Of a stretch of DNA of 62,511 nt, positions 19,001 through 25,000 are shown in pieces. The notes beneath the pieces were generated by a model. That model saw only the letters and a program-made list of their open reading frames with translations. It did no database searches and was not told the DNA's origin. The stretch comes from Macrostomum lignano (taxonomy: Eukaryota), in the NCBI GenBank assembly GCA_002269645.1, contig NIVC01003625.1, positions 1-62,511 on the forward strand, read 5' to 3'. A program made the position numbers and the translations under genes. How positions within the stretch are numbered: position 1 is the stretch's first letter; every line of letters begins with the position of its first letter.

Positions 19001-22000
19001 CGATTCTATGGTTGAGGCGATTCTATGGTTGTGGCGGTTCTATGGTTAGGGCGATTCTGTTGTTGGGCCGATTTTACGGTTGTGGCGATTCTATGGTTGG
19101 GCGATTATACGGTTGGGGCGATTCTATGGTTGTGGCGATTCTATGGCTAGGGCGATTCTATGGTTGGGGTGATTCTATGGTTGGGGCGATTCTGTGGTTG
19201 GGGCGATTCTATGGTTGGGGTGATTCTATGGTTGGGGCGATTCTATGGTTGGGGCGATTCTATGGTTGGGGTGATTCCATGGTTGGAGTGATTCTATGGT
19301 TGGGGCGATTCTATGGTTGGGGCGATTCTATGGTTTGGGCGATTCTATGGTTGGGGCGATTCTATGGTTGGGGTGATTCCATGGTTGGAGCGATTCTATG
19401 GTTGGGGCGATTCTATGGTTGGGGCGATTCTATGGTTGGGGCGATTCTATGGTTGAGGCGATTCTATGGTTGGGGCGATTCTATGATTGGGGCGATTCTA
19501 TAATTGGGGCGATTCTATGGTTGGGGGCGATTCTATGGTTGGGGGTGATTCTATGGTTGGGGCGATTCTATGGTTGGGGCGATTCTATGGTTGGGCGATT
19601 CTATGGTTGGGGCGATTCTATGGTTGGAGCGATTCTATGGCTGGGGCGATTCTATGGTTGAGGCGATTCTATGGTTGGGGCGATTCTATGGTTGTGGCGA
19701 TTCTATGATTGGGGCGATTCTATAATTGGGGCGATTCTATGGTTGGGGCGATTCTATGGTTGGGGGCGATTCTATGGTTGGGGCGATTCTATGGTTGGGG
19801 TGATTCCATGGTTGGAGCGATTCTATGGTTGGAGCGATTCTATGGTTGGGGCGATTCTATGGTGGGGGCGATTCTATGGTTGGGGCGATTCTATGGTTGG
19901 GGCGATTCTATGATTGGGGCGATTCTATAATTGGGGCGATTCTATGGTTGGGGCGATTCTATGGTTGGGGCGATTCTATGGTTGGGGCGATTCTATGGTT
20001 GGGGCGATTCTATGGTTGGGGCGATTCTATGGTTGGGGCGATTCTATGGTTGGAGCGATTCTATGGCTGGGGTGATTCTATGGTTGGGGCGATTCTATGG
20101 TTGTGTGCGATTCTATGGCTATGGCGATTCTTTGGTGGGAAAAATTTATGGTAGGTTGCGATTTCCGAAGTTACGGCGATTTTGGAGTTGACGTATTGCA
20201 AACCCAAACATCAACGGCACAAATAATGACCCATTGCGCAGCCTCAGCTTGGCTCTGGCCTGTAGCAGATATTCAACGCAGCGAATCAGCAGGATGGCGA
20301 GGATGAACACACAGGTGCTCAGAAAGGACTCGTAGTACTTTGATCTGGATGAGGCGCTGATCCAGTCACGGGTGAAGGGCCGGCGTGGAAAAGCGTCGAC
20401 CCGAAAGTAGTTCAAGATCGACAGGTGAGAGATCCACTGCCCTGCAAGCAGATGGGAGCAGAGGTTTCTGGTGGCGGTTCGGGCGATTCTATGTTTGGGG
20501 CGATTCTATGATTGGGGCGATTCTATGGTTGGGGCGATTCTATGGTTGGGGCGATTCTATGATTGGGGCGATTCTATAATTGGGGCGATTCTATGGTTGG
20601 GGGCGATTCTATGGTTGGGGGTGATTCTATGGTTGGGGCGATTCTATGGTTGGGGCGATTCTATGGTTGGGGAGATTCTATGGTTGGGCGATTCTATGGG
20701 CGGGCGATTCTATGGTTGGGGAGATTCTGTGGTTGGGGCGATTTTATGGTTGGGGCGATTCTATGGTTGGGGCGATTCTATGGTTGGGGTGATTCTACGG
20801 TTGGGGCGATTCTACGGTTGGGGCGATTCTATGGTTGGGGCGATTCTATGGTTGGGGCGATTCTATGGTTGGGGCGATTCTATGGTTGGGGCGATTCTAT
20901 GGTTGGGGCGATTTTATGGTTGGGGCGACTCTATGGTTGGGGCGATTCTATAGTTGGGCGATTTTATGGTTGGGGCGATTTTATGGTTGGGGCGATTTTA
21001 TGGTTGGGGCGACTCTATGGTTGGGGCGATTCTATAGTTGGGCGATTTTATGGTTGGGGCGATTTTATGGTTGGGGCGATTCTATGTTTGGGGCGATTCT
21101 ATGGTTGGGGCGACTCTATGGTTGGGGCGATTCTATAGTTGGGCGATTTTATGGTTGGGCGATTCTATGGTTGGGGCGATTCTATGGTTGGGACGATTCT
21201 ATGGTTGGGGCGACTCTATGGTTGGGGCGATTCTATAGTTGGGCGATTTTATGGTTGGGCGATTCTATGGTTGGGGCGATTCTATGGTTGGGACGATTCT
21301 ATGGTTGGGGCGACTCTATGGTTGGGGCGATTCTATGGTTGGGGCGATTCTATGGTTGGAGCGATTCTATGGCTGGGGTGATTCTATGGTTGGGGCGATT
21401 CTATGGTTGTGTGCGATTCTATGGCTATGGCGATTCTTTGGTGGGAAAAATTTATGGTAGGTTGCGATTTCCGAAGTTACGGCGATTTTGGAGTTGACGT
21501 ATTGCAAACCCAAACATCAACGGCACAAATAATGACCCATTGCGCAGCCTCAGCTTGGCTCTGGCCTGTAGCAGATATTCAACGCAGCGAATCAGCAGGA
21601 TGGCGAGGATGAACACACAGGTGCTCAGAAAGGACTCGTAGTACTTTGATCTGGATGAGGCGCTGATCCAGTCACGGGTGAAGGGCCGGCGTGGAAAAGC
21701 GTCGACCCGAAAGTAGTTCAAGATCGACAGGTGAGAGATCCACTGCCCTGCAAGCAGATGGGAGCAGAGGTTTCTGGTGGCGGTTCGGGCGATTCTATGT
21801 TTGGGGCGATTCTATGATTGGGGCGATTCTATGGTTGGGGCGATTCTATGGTTGGGGTGATTCTATGGTTGGGGCGATTCTATGGTTGGGGTGATTCTAC
21901 GGTTGGGGCGATTCTACGGTTGGGGCGATTCTATGGTTGGGGCGATTCTATGGGCGGGCGATTCTATGGTTGGGGAGATTCTATGGTTGGGCGATTCTAT

Positions 22001-25000
22001 GGGCGGGCGATTCTATGGTTGGGGAGATTCTGTGGTTGGGGCGATTTTATGGTTGGGGCGATTCTATGGTTGGGGCGATTCTATGGTTGGGGTGATTCTA
22101 CGGTTGGGGCGATTCTACGGTTGGGGCGATTCTATGGTTGGGGCGATTCTATGGTTGGGGCGATTCTATGGTTGGGGCGATTCTATGGTTGGGGCGATTC
22201 TATGGTTGGGGCGATTCTATGGTTGGGGCGACTCTATGGTTGGGGCGATTCTATAGTTGGGCGATTTTATGGTTGGGGCGATTTTATGGTTGGGGCGATT
22301 TTATGGTTGGGGCGACTCTATGGTTGGGGCGATTCTATAGTTGGGCGATTTTATGGTTGGGGCGATTTTATGGTTGGGGCGATTCTATGTTTGGGGCGAT
22401 TCTATGGTTGGGGCGACTCTATGGTTGGGGCGATTCTATAGTTGGGCGATTTTATGGTTGGGCGATTCTATGGTTGGGGCGATTCTATGGTTGGGACGAT
22501 TCTATGGTTGGGGCGACTCTATGGTTGGGGCGATTCTATAGTTGGGCGATTTTATGGTTGGGCGATTCTATGGTTGGGGCGATTCTATGGTTGGGACGAT
22601 TCTATGGTTGGGGCGACTCTATGGTTGGGGCGATTCTATAGTTGGGCGATTTTATGGTTGGGCGATTCTATGGTTGGGGCGATTCTATGGTTGGGACGAT
22701 TCTATGGTTGGGGCGATTCTATGGTTGGGGCGATTCTATGGTTGGGGCGACTCTATGGTTGGGGCGATTCTATGGTTGGGGCGATTCTATGGTTGGGGCG
22801 ACTCTATGGTTGGGGCGATTCTATGGTTGGGGCGACTCTATGGTTGTGGCGATTCTATGGTTGGGCGATTATACGGTTGGGGCGATTCTATGGTTGTGGC
22901 GATTCTATGGCTAGGGCGATTCTATGGTTGGGGTGATTCTATGGTTGGGGCGATTCTGTGGTTGGGGCGATTCTATGGTTGGGGTGATTCTATGGTTGGG
23001 GCGATTCTATGGTTGGGGCGATTCTATGGTTGGGGTGATTCCATGGTTGGAGTGATTCTATGGTTGGGGCGATTCTATGGTTGGGGCGATTCTATGGTTT
23101 GGGCGATTCTATGGTTGGGGCGATTCTATGGTTGGGGTGATTCCATGGTTGGAGCGATTCTATGGTTGGGGCGATTCTATGGTTGGGGCGATTCTATGGT
23201 TGGGGCGATTCTATGGTTGAGGCGATTCTATGGTTGGGGCGATTCTATGATTGGGGCGATTCTATAATTGGGGCGATTCTATGGTTGGGGGCGATTCTAT
23301 GGTTGGGGGTGATTCTATGGTTGGGGCGATTCTATGGTTGGGGCGATTCTATGGTTGGGCGATTCTATGGTTGGGGCGATTCTATGGTTGGAGCGATTCT
23401 ATGGCTGGGGCGATTCTATGGTTGAGGCGATTCTATGGTTGGGGCGATTCTATGGTTGTGGCGATTCTATGATTGGGGCGATTCTATAATTGGGGCGATT
23501 CTATGGTTGGGGCGATTCTATGGTTGGGGGCGATTCTATGGTTGGGGCGATTCTATGGTTGGGGTGATTCCATGGTTGGAGCGATTCTATGGTTGGAGCG
23601 ATTCTATGGTTGGGGCGATTCTATGGTGGGGGCGATTCTATGGTTGGGGCGATTCTATGGTTGGGGCGATTCTATGATTGGGGCGATTCTATAATTGGGG
23701 CGATTCTATGGTTGGGGGCGATTCTATGGTTGGGGCGATTCTATGGTTGGGGCGATTCTATGGTTGGGGCGATTCTATGGTTGGGGCGATTCTATGGTTG
23801 GGGCGATTCTATGGTTGGAGCGATTCTATGGCTGGGGTGATTCTATGGTTGGGGCGATTCTATGGTTGTGTGCGATTCTATGGCTATGGCGATTCTTTGG
23901 TGGGAAAAATTTATGGTAGGTTGCGATTTCCGAAGTTACGGCGATTTTGGAGTTGACGTATTGCAAACCCAAACATCAACGGCACAAATAATGACCCATT
24001 GCGCAGCCTCAGCTTGGCTCTGGCCTGTAGCAGATATTCAACGCAGCGAATCAGCAGGATGGCGAGGATGAACACACAGGTGCTCAGAAAGGACTCGTAG
24101 TACTTTGATCTGGATGAGGCGCTGATCCAGTCACGGGTGAAGGGCCGGCGTGGAAAAGCGTCGACCCGAAAGTAGTTCAAGATCGACAGGTGAGAGATCC
24201 ACTGCCCTGCAAGCAGATGGGAGCAGAGGTTTCTGGTGGCGGTTCGGGCGATTCTATGTTTGGGGCGATTCTATGATTGGGGCGATTCTATGGTTGGGGC
24301 GATTCTATGGTTGGGGTGATTCTATGGTTGGGGCGATTCTATGGTTGGGGTGATTCTACGGTTGGGGCGATTCTACGGTTGGGGCGATTCTATGGTTGGG
24401 GCGATTCTATGGGCGGGCGATTCTATGGTTGGGGAGATTCTATGGTTGGGCGATTCTATGGGCGGGCGATTCTATGGTTGGGGAGATTCTGTGGTTGGGG
24501 CGATTTTATGGTTGGGGCGATTCTATGGTTGGGGCGATTCTATGGTTGGGGTGATTCTACGGTTGGGGCGATTCTACGGTTGGGGCGATTCTATGGTTGG
24601 GGCGATTCTATGGTTGGGGCGATTCTATGGTTGGGGCGATTCTATGGTTGGGGCGATTCTATGGTTGGGGCGATTCTATGGTTGGGGCGACTCTATGGTT
24701 GGGGCGATTCTATAGTTGGGCGATTTTATGGTTGGGGCGATTTTATGGTTGGGGCGATTTTATGGTTGGGGCGACTCTATGGTTGGGGCGATTCTATAGT
24801 TGGGCGATTTTATGGTTGGGGCGATTTTATGGTTGGGGCGATTCTATGTTTGGGGCGATTCTATGGTTGAGGCGACTCTATGGTTGGGGCGATTCTATAG
24901 TTGGGCGATTTTATGGTTGGGCGATTCTATGGTTGGGGCGATTCTATGGTTGGGACGATTCTATGGTTGGGGCGACTCTATGGTTGGGGCGATTCTATAG

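What the first reader, a model, noticed from the sequence alone, without database searches (positions are those of the whole stretch)
20120..24250. Three identical, frame-asymmetric copies of PIG-W exon 2: only 'exactly one' gives a protein
Seen: a ~370-bp cassette holding a 211-nt exon (phase 1 in, phase 2 out) occurs three times (20231-20441, 21537-21747, 23996-24206) inside one minisatellite, and I found no difference between copies. One copy gives a 1758-nt ORF. Two copies shift the frame and reach TGA 24 codons into the second copy; three copies or none also shift the frame. Known: PIG-W/GWT1 acylates inositol in GPI synthesis and is essential in yeast. Inference: if real, the locus needs mutually exclusive splicing among identical exons or NMD of multi-copy transcripts. 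The array on both sides of the exon acts as a satellite-driven exon-duplication engine, and exon copy number could tune GPI-anchor output.
Basis: partly seen in the sequence, partly recalled or inferred. Interest (0 to 1): 0.85.

Follow-up and report, generated by a model that had tools for sequence, protein, structure and literature searches.

The report
Triplicated exon inside an intronic minisatellite
In a draft genome contig of the flatworm Macrostomum lignano, one exon of a GPI-anchor synthesis gene (PIG-W/GWT1 family) sits inside a 9-kb minisatellite and appears three times as perfect copies, most likely a very young and probably gene-breaking duplication, tolerated because the genome has many spare copies, or else an assembly error.

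Summary
Three byte-identical 211-nt exons lie on the minus strand at 20231-20441, 21537-21747 and 23996-24206, inside a 17-bp minisatellite (16518-25618). A 1758-nt, 585-aa GWT1-family ORF exists only with exactly one copy.

The window is contig NIVC01003625.1 of the Macrostomum lignano Mlig_3_7 assembly (PacBio CLR, Canu, Pilon). Three paralogous loci have the same five exons and phases but a single exon 2, so the exon and its boundaries are real.

Each inter-copy segment is a prefix of the right-hand array followed by a suffix of the left-hand array. That is the footprint of two unequal exchanges between the arrays flanking the exon. The copies are very young (0-1 differences per 1.5 kb), and there are no older decayed copies.

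Nothing supports "mutually exclusive splicing". I found no docking/selector complementarity, the inter-copy introns are long, and the splice sites are identical. M. lignano is a neopolyploid with at least five GWT1-family gene groups, so a frame-breaking allele need not be rescued.

The best reading is a recent, redundancy-tolerated, probably null or hypomorphic structural variant (about 0.55). An assembly artefact cannot be excluded without reads (about 0.3). This is a known kind of event and of modest interest.

The parts
25831..25975 (-). Exon 1 (145 nt, ends in phase 1). It starts with ATG at 25975 and has donor AAAC|GTGAGT.
   Evidence: The junction VKR|QW matches protein P0001 and the paralogs.
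16518..25618 (.). 17-bp minisatellite. The unit is CGATTCTATGGTTGGGG on the + strand, or AGAATCGCCCCAACCAT in gene orientation. There are about 533 units. It fills intron 1, the inter-copy introns and intron 2.
   Evidence: TRF. Large blocks repeated exactly within the array are listed.
23996..24206 (-). Exon 2 copy c3, the first to be transcribed. The non-array cassette spans about 23885-24245.
21537..21747 (-). Exon 2 copy c2. The non-array cassette spans about 21426-21786.
20231..20441 (-). Exon 2 copy c1, the last to be transcribed and the one next to exon 3. The non-array cassette spans about 20120-20480. The acceptor is TTGCAG|GG and the donor is the weak TGG|GTCATT. It encodes residues 49-119, including the start of the GWT1 domain and a hydrophobic, probably first transmembrane, segment.
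16001..16447 (-). Exon 3 (447 nt). The annotated GenBank CDS (P0003, 345 aa) starts at its first in-frame ATG (16083).
13370..14093 (-). Exon 4 (724 nt), the core of the GWT1 domain.
12854..13084 (-). Exon 5 (231 nt including the stop codon).
14154..15837 (.). Intron-3 minisatellite (17 bp; CTCAGAGAGAATCACAC in gene orientation). It is related to the intron-1/2 unit and sits at the same intron position in the paralogs.
19078..20551 (.). Duplication block A (left array plus c1 plus 110 bp). It equals 22842-24316 around c3, with a single 1-bp G-run indel.
21315..22824 (.). Duplication block B (222 bp of left array, c2, and 1077 bp of right array). It equals 23774-25283 around c3, with one G/A mismatch (22411 vs 24870).
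20442..21336 (.). Right flank of c1. It matches the right flank of c2 (21748-22639) with 14 differences in 895 bp, 13 of them in a patch at 20552-20653. The stretch 20533-20671 is an exact copy of left-array segments 19457-19595 and 23221-23359, a conversion-like mosaic.
21315..21336 (.). Junction J1. The right-flank array (about 895 bp after c1) switches here to the last 222 bp of left-flank array before c2.
22825..22841 (.). Junction J2. The right-flank array (1077 bp after c2) switches here to the last 1153 bp of left-flank array before c3.

Best explanation
This is a real but very recent structural variant of one GWT1/PIG-W-family gene (BOX15_Mlig031652g1) of Macrostomum lignano.

Exon 2 lies in a roughly 360-bp island of unique sequence with the same 17-bp minisatellite on both sides. 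Two successive unequal (out-of-register) exchanges between the array on one side of the exon and the array on the other side copied the island, together with different lengths of array. The result is three identical exons spaced 1306 and 2459 bp apart. A small conversion-like patch was added later.

All copies carry the same splice sites and are separated by ordinary-length introns. The default expectation is therefore that all three are spliced in. That puts a stop at codon 144 and makes the mRNA a target for nonsense-mediated decay. At most a minority of transcripts that happen to skip two copies would encode the 585-aa enzyme. The allele is thus null or hypomorphic.

It persists because the genome is neopolyploid and holds several other GWT1-family genes, including another version of this one.

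Shown here: the anatomy, the frame arithmetic, the junction structure and the redundancy. Inferred: that the copies exist in the animal, how they are spliced, and that the allele is tolerated rather than used.
For: - Identity and frame arithmetic.
- Exon 2 is genuine coding sequence with conserved boundaries and phases. Paralog loci L001, L003 and L004 have the same five exons, with exon 2 of 208 nt in phase 1/2, present once.
- The gene was under purifying selection until recently. dN/dS against L001 is 0.29 overall and 0.29 in exon 2, with dS 0.64. The five-exon ORF is otherwise intact.
- Both inter-copy segments are a right-flank prefix plus a left-flank suffix, with different breakpoints.
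- The array elsewhere also contains large exact blocks at offsets of 834, 937 and 2060 bp, so out-of-register exchange is general in it.
- The 139-bp patch in the right flank of c1 is an exact copy of a left-array segment. That kind of mosaic fits recombination more easily than an assembler loop.
- There are no Ns or gaps, so this is not a scaffolding duplicate.
- The same contig holds another near-perfect 5.37-kb tandem duplication. Its junction lies in unique sequence with a 34-bp filler, so reads must contain that junction. Very young tandem duplications therefore do occur in this contig.
- Redundancy: Mlig023648 g1-3, Mlig008311 g1-2, Mlig032094 g1-2 and Mlig025188 g1, plus the ML2 variants P0001 and P0017.
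- The genome is described as neopolyploid, with about 70% of the assembly in three-copy blocks (PMC10733133).
Against: - No read-level, depth or cDNA evidence could be obtained.
- The assembly is PacBio CLR with Canu 1.4, errorRate set to 0.04, polished with Pilon (PMC5730564). Its users call it error-prone, with collapsed or expanded haplovariants (PMC10733133).
- Polishing with multi-mapping short reads would erase small differences between copies. Perfect identity is therefore weak evidence of recent origin.
- Unequal exchange and a false overlap inside the array predict the same prefix-plus-suffix structure.
- The GenBank model (345 aa) does not reveal the exon-2 content of the mRNA. It equals the longest ORF of a zero-copy or 5'-truncated transcript. 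It may simply reflect the pipeline's repeat filter, because TRF spans the cassettes.
Confidence: 0.55

Rival explanations
1. This is an assembly artefact. The animal has one exon-2 cassette per gene copy. Canu chained reads, possibly from two or three near-identical subgenome or haplotype versions of the locus, through false overlaps inside the minisatellite. Pilon then homogenised the copies.
For: - The assembly is a draft from PacBio CLR reads with the Canu errorRate setting at 0.04.
- The assembly is larger than the measured genome and is described as containing expanded haplovariants.
- The array spans 9.1 kb, near the read-length limit.
- There are three cassettes and three reported subgenomes.
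- Only one locus of this gene (g1) is annotated, although most loci have about three copies.
- No homeologous contig was found through the neighbouring gene.
- The right flank of c1 differs from the others by a patch that could be a haplovariant.
Against: - There are no gaps in the contig.
- Flanks at the two junctions are only 80-92% identical, the ordinary level for this array (0.918 +/- 0.026). A false dovetail overlap would have had to beat much longer true overlaps anchored on the unique cassette.
- The spacings of 1.3 and 2.5 kb are easily spanned by single reads.
- The other known version of the gene (P0001) differs inside exon 2 (Q to L), yet the three copies here are identical.
- A second tandem duplication in the contig has a junction in unique sequence that cannot be a false overlap.
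Confidence: 0.3
2. The cluster is functional and works on an 'exactly one' rule. The triplication is real, and the gene still makes enzyme because splicing includes one of the identical copies in a useful fraction of transcripts. NMD removes the rest, so copy number sets the output. This is the first reader's view, and would be an incipient mutually exclusive exon cluster.
For: - The frame asymmetry makes NMD an automatic filter.
- The exon-2 donor is weak (GTCATT here, GTCTGA in the paralogs), so skipping is plausible.
- The rest of the ORF is intact.
- Published models hold that tandem exon duplication often yields mutually exclusive splicing (PMC6071210).
Against: - There is no competing-structure signal between the unique intron parts and the cassette (z from -0.5 to +1.9).
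- Inter-copy introns are 1095 and 2248 nt, so there is no steric exclusion.
- All splice sites are identical GT-AG sites.
- The copies are identical, so no isoform diversity is gained.
- There are no older copies, and the paralogs have one exon 2.
- Heavy gene redundancy removes any need for rescue.
- An intact ORF is also what a very young null allele would show.
Confidence: 0.07
3. Multi-copy mRNA still yields enzyme from an internal start. The ATG formed by the last bases of exon 2 (CAATGG) is in frame with the next copy. Any 2- or 3-copy mRNA therefore carries a 538-codon ORF (MG plus residues 50-585) containing the whole GWT1 domain.
For: The ORF table by copy number shows this ORF. The Pfam domain starts at residue 74. 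The ATG has G at -3 and G at +4.
Against: The ATG lies 352 or 563 nt downstream of the exon-1 ATG, behind a 143-codon ORF (and a 96-codon ORF in the three-copy mRNA). Reaching it would need inefficient reinitiation or leaky scanning. Such mRNAs are expected NMD targets. There is no evidence of use.
Confidence: 0.03

Closest known systems
Tandem exon duplication as the origin of mutually exclusive exons (the Kondrashov & Koonin 2001 and Letunic et al. 2002 model, from my own knowledge; Ivanov & Pervouchine 2018, PMC6071210)
   Same: The copies are tandem, of the same length and the same phase. The exon length is not a multiple of 3, so only one copy per mRNA keeps the frame and NMD would remove the others.
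   Different: The copies are 100% identical, so there is no isoform diversity. No docking/selector structure or any other exclusivity mechanism was found. There is no transcript evidence. The duplication is far younger than any described cluster and may be neutral, harmful or an artefact.
Out-of-frame intragenic exon duplications caused by non-allelic or unequal recombination between intronic repeats, such as disease alleles of DMD or BRCA1 (own knowledge)
   Same: Repeats flanking an exon mediate its duplication. The duplicated exon shifts the frame and gives a loss-of-function allele.
   Different: The mediating repeats here are one continuous minisatellite on both sides of the exon rather than dispersed elements. 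The event happened twice. The carrier is a neopolyploid with spare paralogs.
Minisatellite and VNTR dynamics: unequal exchange and conversion-like mosaics, as in human hypervariable minisatellites or the LPA KIV-2 exon-pair VNTR (own knowledge)
   Same: The array contains large exact higher-order blocks, variable unit lengths and a conversion-like patch. Coding exons are carried along as passengers in a repeat unit.
   Different: In LPA the repeated exons stay in frame and copy number is functional. Here each extra copy breaks the frame.
False duplications in long-read or draft assemblies of heterozygous or polyploid genomes (own knowledge; caveats specific to Mlig_3_7 in PMC10733133)
   Same: Near-identical adjacent copies appear in a draft CLR assembly of a neopolyploid that is known to contain expanded haplovariants.
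   Different: There is no gap between the copies. The junctions lie within an ungapped contig. The flanks are mosaic rather than a simple repeat of one template.

Membership tests
GWT1 / PIG-W inositol acyltransferase family (PF06423) | Full-length match to the Pfam GWT1 profile above the gathering score | tested here: met
   Residues 74-557 match profile positions 7-429 of 437. E is 1.2e-68 at 232.5 bits, against a cut-off of 29.6.
GWT1 / PIG-W inositol acyltransferase family (PF06423) | Sequence similarity to an experimentally characterised member | tested here: met
   Yeast Gwt1 cryo-EM chain 8xij_A matches with E 1e-15, aligning query residues 130-407 and 501-556.
GWT1 / PIG-W inositol acyltransferase family (PF06423) | Being the single, essential PIG-W orthologue of the organism | tested here: not met
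   M. lignano has at least five GWT1-family gene groups, 39-88% identical to this one, at about nine annotated loci. The gene belongs to the family, but essentiality cannot be assumed.
GWT1 / PIG-W inositol acyltransferase family (PF06423) | Acyl-CoA:GlcN-PI inositol acyltransferase activity | not testable with these tools
   This needs a biochemical assay or complementation of a gwt1/PIGW mutant.
Mutually exclusive exon cluster | Tandem homologous exons of equal length and phase | tested here: met
   There are three identical 211-nt exons, phase 1 in and phase 2 out.
Mutually exclusive exon cluster | Transcripts contain exactly one exon of the cluster | not testable with these tools
   No cDNA or RNA-seq contigs could be reached. 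The GenBank CDS of 345 aa is uninformative.
Mutually exclusive exon cluster | Competing RNA structures (a docking site and selector sequences) | tested here: not met
   Duplex energies between the unique intron-1 or intron-2 segments and the cassette are no better than shuffled controls (z from -0.53 to +1.92).
Mutually exclusive exon cluster | Steric hindrance (an inter-exon intron too short to splice) or incompatible U2/U12 splice sites | tested here: not met
   The inter-copy introns are 1095 and 2248 nt. All copies have the same AG acceptor and GT donor.
Mutually exclusive exon cluster | A frame shift that lets NMD remove multi-copy or zero-copy products | tested here: met
   Zero copies give a stop at codon 59, and 2-4 copies give a stop at codon 144. 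That NMD actually acts on them was not tested.
Tandem duplication by unequal exchange between flanking direct repeats | Direct repeats of the same family on both sides of the duplicated segment | tested here: met
   The 17-bp array lies on both sides of every cassette. Array chunks are about 92% identical to one another.
Tandem duplication by unequal exchange between flanking direct repeats | Each inter-copy segment is a prefix of the downstream flank joined to a suffix of the upstream flank | tested here: met
   Between c2 and c3, 21748-22824 equals 24207-25283 and 22842-23995 equals 19078-20230. Between c1 and c2, 20442-21336 approximates 21748-22639 and 21315-21536 equals 20009-20230.
Tandem duplication by unequal exchange between flanking direct repeats | Copy-number polymorphism among individuals, lines or subgenomes | not testable with these tools
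   This needs reads or assemblies from other lines, such as NL10 or the DV1 sublines.
Assembly false duplication | Copies flank a scaffold gap or a contig end | tested here: not met
   The window contains no N, and the cassettes are 20 kb or more from either end.
Assembly false duplication | Read depth per copy is a fraction of that of neighbouring unique sequence, and no read spans two copies | not testable with these tools

The most novel reading that the evidence does not exclude
The triplication is real and the locus is still in use. The worm makes functional PIG-W-like enzyme by including just one of three identical, frame-asymmetric exons, with NMD clearing the other products. Minisatellite-driven changes in exon copy number would then act as a heritable, rapidly mutating dial on expression. 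This would be a living snapshot of the very first step in the birth of a mutually exclusive exon cluster.
Probability: 0.06. Interest if true: 0.7.

Novelty: new member of a known kind. Interest (0 to 1): 0.3.

Why it matters
If the copies are real, this is an unusually clean, essentially zero-age example of how an intronic minisatellite can duplicate an exon. Both recombination junctions are still readable. It sits at the step that theory places at the origin of mutually exclusive exons. It also shows how neopolyploid redundancy lets such frame-breaking variants survive.

In practice it flags a mis-annotated gene. The GenBank CDS is 345 aa, whereas the intact reading is 585 aa. It also marks a locus that is a good test of assembly correctness in Mlig_3_7.

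If the copies are an artefact, the finding is a caution about gene models inside tandem arrays in CLR assemblies. In neither case does it change what is known about GPI biosynthesis.

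Tried and rejected
1. I searched the protein database with the predicted two-copy product (exon 1, exon 2 and a frameshifted exon 2), hoping to find transcript-derived proteins. It returned nothing, not even P0001, which shares 118 identical residues. This is a tool-sensitivity failure, not evidence.
P0001 has no contig on record.
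3. I searched the literature and supplements for Mlig031652 and its paralogs to get expression data. Nothing was found.
4. I looked for a homeologous contig through the neighbouring ankyrin-repeat ORF. The best M. lignano hits are only 42-56% identical, so no homeolog was retrievable.
5. I tested for a Dscam-like docking/selector mechanism. It was rejected.
6. I tested rescue by spliced-leader trans-splicing. The SL ends in ATG (PMC8629364), but SL joined to exon 2 or exon 3 is out of frame and stops after 10 or 24 codons.
7. I considered whether the cassette is a transposon or retro-copy. This was rejected because it carries the native intron-exon boundaries shared with the paralogs.
8. I looked for older, decayed cassette copies that would indicate a long-running 'engine'. 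None exist.
9. I tried using the 345-aa GenBank model as evidence for multi-copy mRNA. This was rejected because multi-copy mRNAs would give a 538-aa ORF, and 345 aa fits zero-copy or truncated models.
10. A first blastn self-comparison gave no output. I replaced it with an exact-diagonal scan.

Full report
**What is in the sequence**

Positions 16518-25618 of the window form one 17-bp minisatellite (unit CGATTCTATGGTTGGGG, about 533 units, 83% matches). Three islands of non-repeat sequence, each about 360 bp, interrupt it. Each island holds the same 211-nt segment, at 20231-20441, 21537-21747 and 23996-24206, and the three are identical base for base.

Exact identity runs on into the array in every pair. 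It covers 543 bp for c1/c2, 602 bp for c1/c3 and 1096 bp for c2/c3. A low-stringency BLAST of the island finds only these three perfect copies in the 62.5-kb window, with no decayed remnants.

**The gene**

Read on the minus strand, the 211-nt segment is an exon with a TTGCAG| acceptor and a weak |GTCATT donor. The five exons are:

| Exon | Coordinates | Length |
|---|---|---|
| 1 | 25975-25831 | 145 nt |
| 2 | any one of the three copies | 211 nt |
| 3 | 16447-16001 | 447 nt |
| 4 | 14093-13370 | 724 nt |
| 5 | 13084-12854 | 231 nt |

With one copy of exon 2 they give a 1758-nt ORF of 585 aa. With no copy the frame stops at codon 59. With 2, 3 or 4 copies it stops at codon 144, a TGA after 24 codons of the second copy.

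The protein matches Pfam GWT1 (PF06423) over residues 74-557 with E 1.2e-68. It matches the solved yeast Gwt1 structure 8xij with E 1e-15. Exon 2 encodes residues 49-119, which cover the start of the domain and a hydrophobic, probably first transmembrane, segment. It is therefore not dispensable.

**Origin of the window**

A protein search identifies the organism as the flatworm Macrostomum lignano. The window is the whole contig NIVC01003625.1 of assembly Mlig_3_7 (GCA_002269645.1).

GenBank annotates only a 345-aa protein here (BOX15_Mlig031652g1, P0003). It starts at the first in-frame ATG of exon 3.

The assembly was made from PacBio CLR reads with Canu 1.4 (errorRate 0.04). It was polished with Pilon using Illumina and RNA-seq reads, then scaffolded. 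The genome annotation used a core transcript set from which transcripts overlapping repeat annotations had been removed (PMC5730564). TRF reports the array as one block that spans the cassettes. The truncated model may therefore be a by-product of that filter; this is my inference.

**Is exon 2 real?**

M. lignano has a whole family of GWT1-like genes:
- Mlig023648 g1-3 and Mlig008311 g1-2, 68% identical to this protein
- Mlig032094 g1-2, 45% identical
- Mlig025188, 40% identical
- ML2-assembly models P0001 and P0017, which are a second version of this same gene; P0001 is 88% identical by BLASTP overall and about 97% identical outside a frameshifted stretch

I fetched three paralogous loci (L001, L003, L004). 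All have the same five exons. I determined the exon lengths and phases for L001: exon 1 is 142 nt and exon 2 is 208 nt, both 3n+1. In all three loci the exon-2 acceptor and donor sit at the same positions as in the window. Each has a single exon 2. P0001 carries exactly the predicted exon 1/2 and 2/3 junctions.

Between the window gene and L001, dN/dS is 0.29 overall and 0.29 within exon 2, with dS 0.64. The exon and its boundaries are therefore genuine, and the gene evolved under constraint for most of its history.

In the paralogs a related minisatellite (AGAATCGCCCCAGAG) lies only in intron 1, just upstream of exon 2, and intron 2 is about 780 bp of unique sequence. In the window the array lies on both sides of the exon.

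**How the copies arose**

Call the array to the left of a cassette on the + strand XL; it leads towards exon 3. Call the array to the right XR; it leads towards exon 1.

- The segment between c2 and c3 is the first 1077 bp of XR (21748-22824 = 24207-25283, one mismatch), then about 17 bp, then the last 1153 bp of XL (22842-23995 = 19078-20230, one G-run indel).
- The segment between c1 and c2 is the first 895 bp or so of XR (20442-21336 vs 21748-22639), followed by the last 222 bp of XL (21315-21536 = 20009-20230).

This is the structure expected from two out-of-register exchanges between XR and XL with different breakpoints. One possible order is as follows. The first event made XL-c-XR(1077)-XL(1153)-c-XR. 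The second joined XR(895) to XL(-222) and added the third copy.

The only substantial difference among the copies is a patch in the right flank of c1, with 13 of its 14 differences inside 20552-20653. Here 139 bp (20533-20671) are an exact copy of XL segments at 19457 and 23221. That is a conversion-like mosaic.

Elsewhere the array also contains exact blocks of 200-360 bp repeated at offsets of 834, 937 and 2060 bp. Block-wise misalignment is thus a general property of this array, and the exon is a passenger.

The word 'engine' overstates it. There are no older copies, and none of the paralogs has more than one exon 2.

**Real or artefact?**

The sequence alone cannot settle this.

For an artefact:
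- It is a draft CLR assembly of a neopolyploid. Its users describe it as error-prone, with collapsed or expanded haplovariants, and as larger than the measured genome (PMC10733133).
- The array is 9 kb long.
- Pilon polishing with multi-mapping reads would homogenise the copies.
- Unequal exchange and a false overlap within the array predict the same prefix-plus-suffix layout.

For a real triplication:
- The contig has no gaps.
- At both junctions the parental flanks are only 80-92% identical, the ordinary background for this array (0.918 +/- 0.026). A false overlap would have had to beat longer true overlaps anchored on the unique cassette.
- The 1.3-kb and 2.5-kb spacings are easily spanned by single reads.
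- The flanks are mosaic rather than a simple re-use of one template.
- The same contig holds a second near-perfect tandem duplication of 5.37 kb (39891-45223 and 45258-50589, with one substitution and three 1-bp indels). Its junction lies in unique sequence and carries a 34-bp filler. That junction must be present in reads, so very young tandem duplications do occur in this contig.

I put a real triplication at about 0.6-0.65 in total across all readings, and an artefact at about 0.3.

**Consequences if real**

I found nothing that would make the spliceosome choose exactly one of three identical exons.
- Duplex energies between the unique parts of introns 1 and 2 and the cassette are no better than shuffled controls (z from -0.5 to +1.9).
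- The inter-copy introns are 1095 and 2248 nt, so there is no steric exclusion.
- All sites are the same GT-AG type.

The default prediction is inclusion of all three copies, a stop at codon 144, and NMD. The weak donor, which is also weak in the paralogs (GTCTGA), could allow some skipping. A minority of single-copy productive mRNA is therefore possible.

The allele is most simply a young null or hypomorph. It is tolerated because of the other GWT1-family genes and the polyploid background. Its otherwise intact ORF fits its very young age.

The published idea that tandem exon duplication tends to create mutually exclusive splicing relies on duplicated arms of intronic stem-loops (PMC6071210). 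No such signal is seen here.

Two side observations:
- The last bases of exon 2 (CAATGG) supply an ATG that is in frame with the next copy. Any multi-copy mRNA therefore carries a 538-codon ORF containing the whole GWT1 domain, behind a 143-codon upstream ORF. Use of this ATG is unlikely but testable.
- The 35-nt spliced leader ends in ATG (PMC8629364). Joined to exon 2 or exon 3 it is out of frame.

The annotated 345-aa protein equals the longest ORF of a zero-copy or 5'-truncated transcript, not of a multi-copy one. It therefore says nothing about exon-2 usage.

**Comparison with what is known, and verdict**

The gene is a member of the GWT1/PIG-W family, but it is not a unique orthologue, so 'essential' cannot be carried over from yeast.

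The arrangement works like known out-of-frame intragenic exon duplications caused by recombination between flanking repeats. Formally it also matches the first step of the tandem-duplication model for the origin of mutually exclusive exons. It fails the tests for an established mutually exclusive cluster on mechanism and on divergence between copies, and transcript evidence could not be tested.

It is a new example of a known kind of event, in a draft assembly and unverified by reads. Interest is modest (0.3). The most novel reading still open is a functioning 'exactly one of three identical exons' locus whose copy number tunes expression. I put that at about 0.06 probability. It would be worth about 0.7 if true.

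Noticed in passing
window 39891-45223 and 45258-50589: This is a second, unrelated, near-perfect tandem duplication with a 5.37-kb unit. The copies differ by one substitution and three 1-bp indels. The junction lies in unique sequence and carries a 34-bp filler (45224-45257) that partly repeats TCATTTACATTTAGAA. It looks like a very young, replication-type tandem duplication. Each unit contains a 21/42-bp minisatellite and a 218-aa ORF with no Pfam match.
   Followed up: partly
proteins P0002, P0004-P0006, P0009-P0012, P0018; loci L001, L003, L004: M. lignano has an expanded GWT1/PIG-W family, with at least five gene groups 39-88% identical to this one at about nine annotated loci. To my knowledge most animals have one PIGW gene. 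Which group is the canonical PIG-W was not determined.
   Followed up: partly
window 14154-15837, 16518-25618 and about 13140-13355; L001 10179-11000, 12684-13332 and 14082-15069; L003 3799-4057, 5685-5963, 10742-11056 and 11808-12419: Paralogs that diverged at dS of about 0.64 keep related minisatellites at the same intron positions. Intron 1 has the AGAATCGCCCC core, intron 3 has the AGAATCACACC core, and intron 4 has a (GTCT)n microsatellite. Either these intronic arrays are old and maintained, or they are seeded repeatedly at the same sites.
   Followed up: partly
window 6476-7058: A 22-bp minisatellite (TCACAGCTATTAGGGGCGATTC) outside the gene carries the same GGGGCGATTC core as the intron-1/2 array. 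This suggests a dispersed family of related minisatellites.
   Followed up: no
window exon-2 3' ends at 20231-20234, 21537-21540 and 23996-23999 (minus strand ...CAATGG): The ATG at the end of exon 2 is in frame with a following exon-2 copy. Two- and three-copy mRNAs therefore carry a 538-codon ORF (MG plus residues 50-585) that includes the entire GWT1 domain. The ATG has G at -3 and G at +4.
   Followed up: yes
window 12854-16083 (GenBank CDS of BOX15_Mlig031652g1): The deposited gene model (345 aa) misses exons 1 and 2 and the first 364 nt of exon 3. The intact reading is 585 aa. The 345-aa ORF is what an ORF caller returns for a zero-copy or 5'-truncated transcript.
   Followed up: yes
window 30994-33204 (+): A 736-aa uninterrupted ORF built from about 21 tandem 99-bp (33-aa) ankyrin repeats (Pfam Ank_4, E 4e-53). 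It is not present as an annotated protein in the database. The nearest M. lignano proteins are 42-56% identical, and several combine Mab-21 and ankyrin domains.
   Followed up: partly
window 10040-11064, 42970-43819 and 48336-49185: A 21-bp minisatellite (GCACTCATTTTGGCGCCGCAG) occurs at three places. It is open in several frames on both strands, giving spurious ORFs of 335-391 aa.
   Followed up: no
window 37648-38673 (-): A 341-aa ORF matches the amiloride-sensitive sodium channel family (PF00858, E 5e-25). It is probably one exon of a DEG/ENaC gene.
   Followed up: no
The GWT1-ankyrin neighbourhood may be an old duplicated block.
   Followed up: no
L003 5963-10742: In paralog Mlig008311g2, intron 3 is about 5.5 kb. 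The intron-3 minisatellite is split into two parts about 4.8 kb apart, which suggests an insertion into the array.
   Followed up: no
tool behaviour: The word-indexed protein search returned no hit for a 143-aa query whose first 118 residues are nearly identical to P0001. Negative results from that tool on short queries should not be trusted.
   Followed up: no
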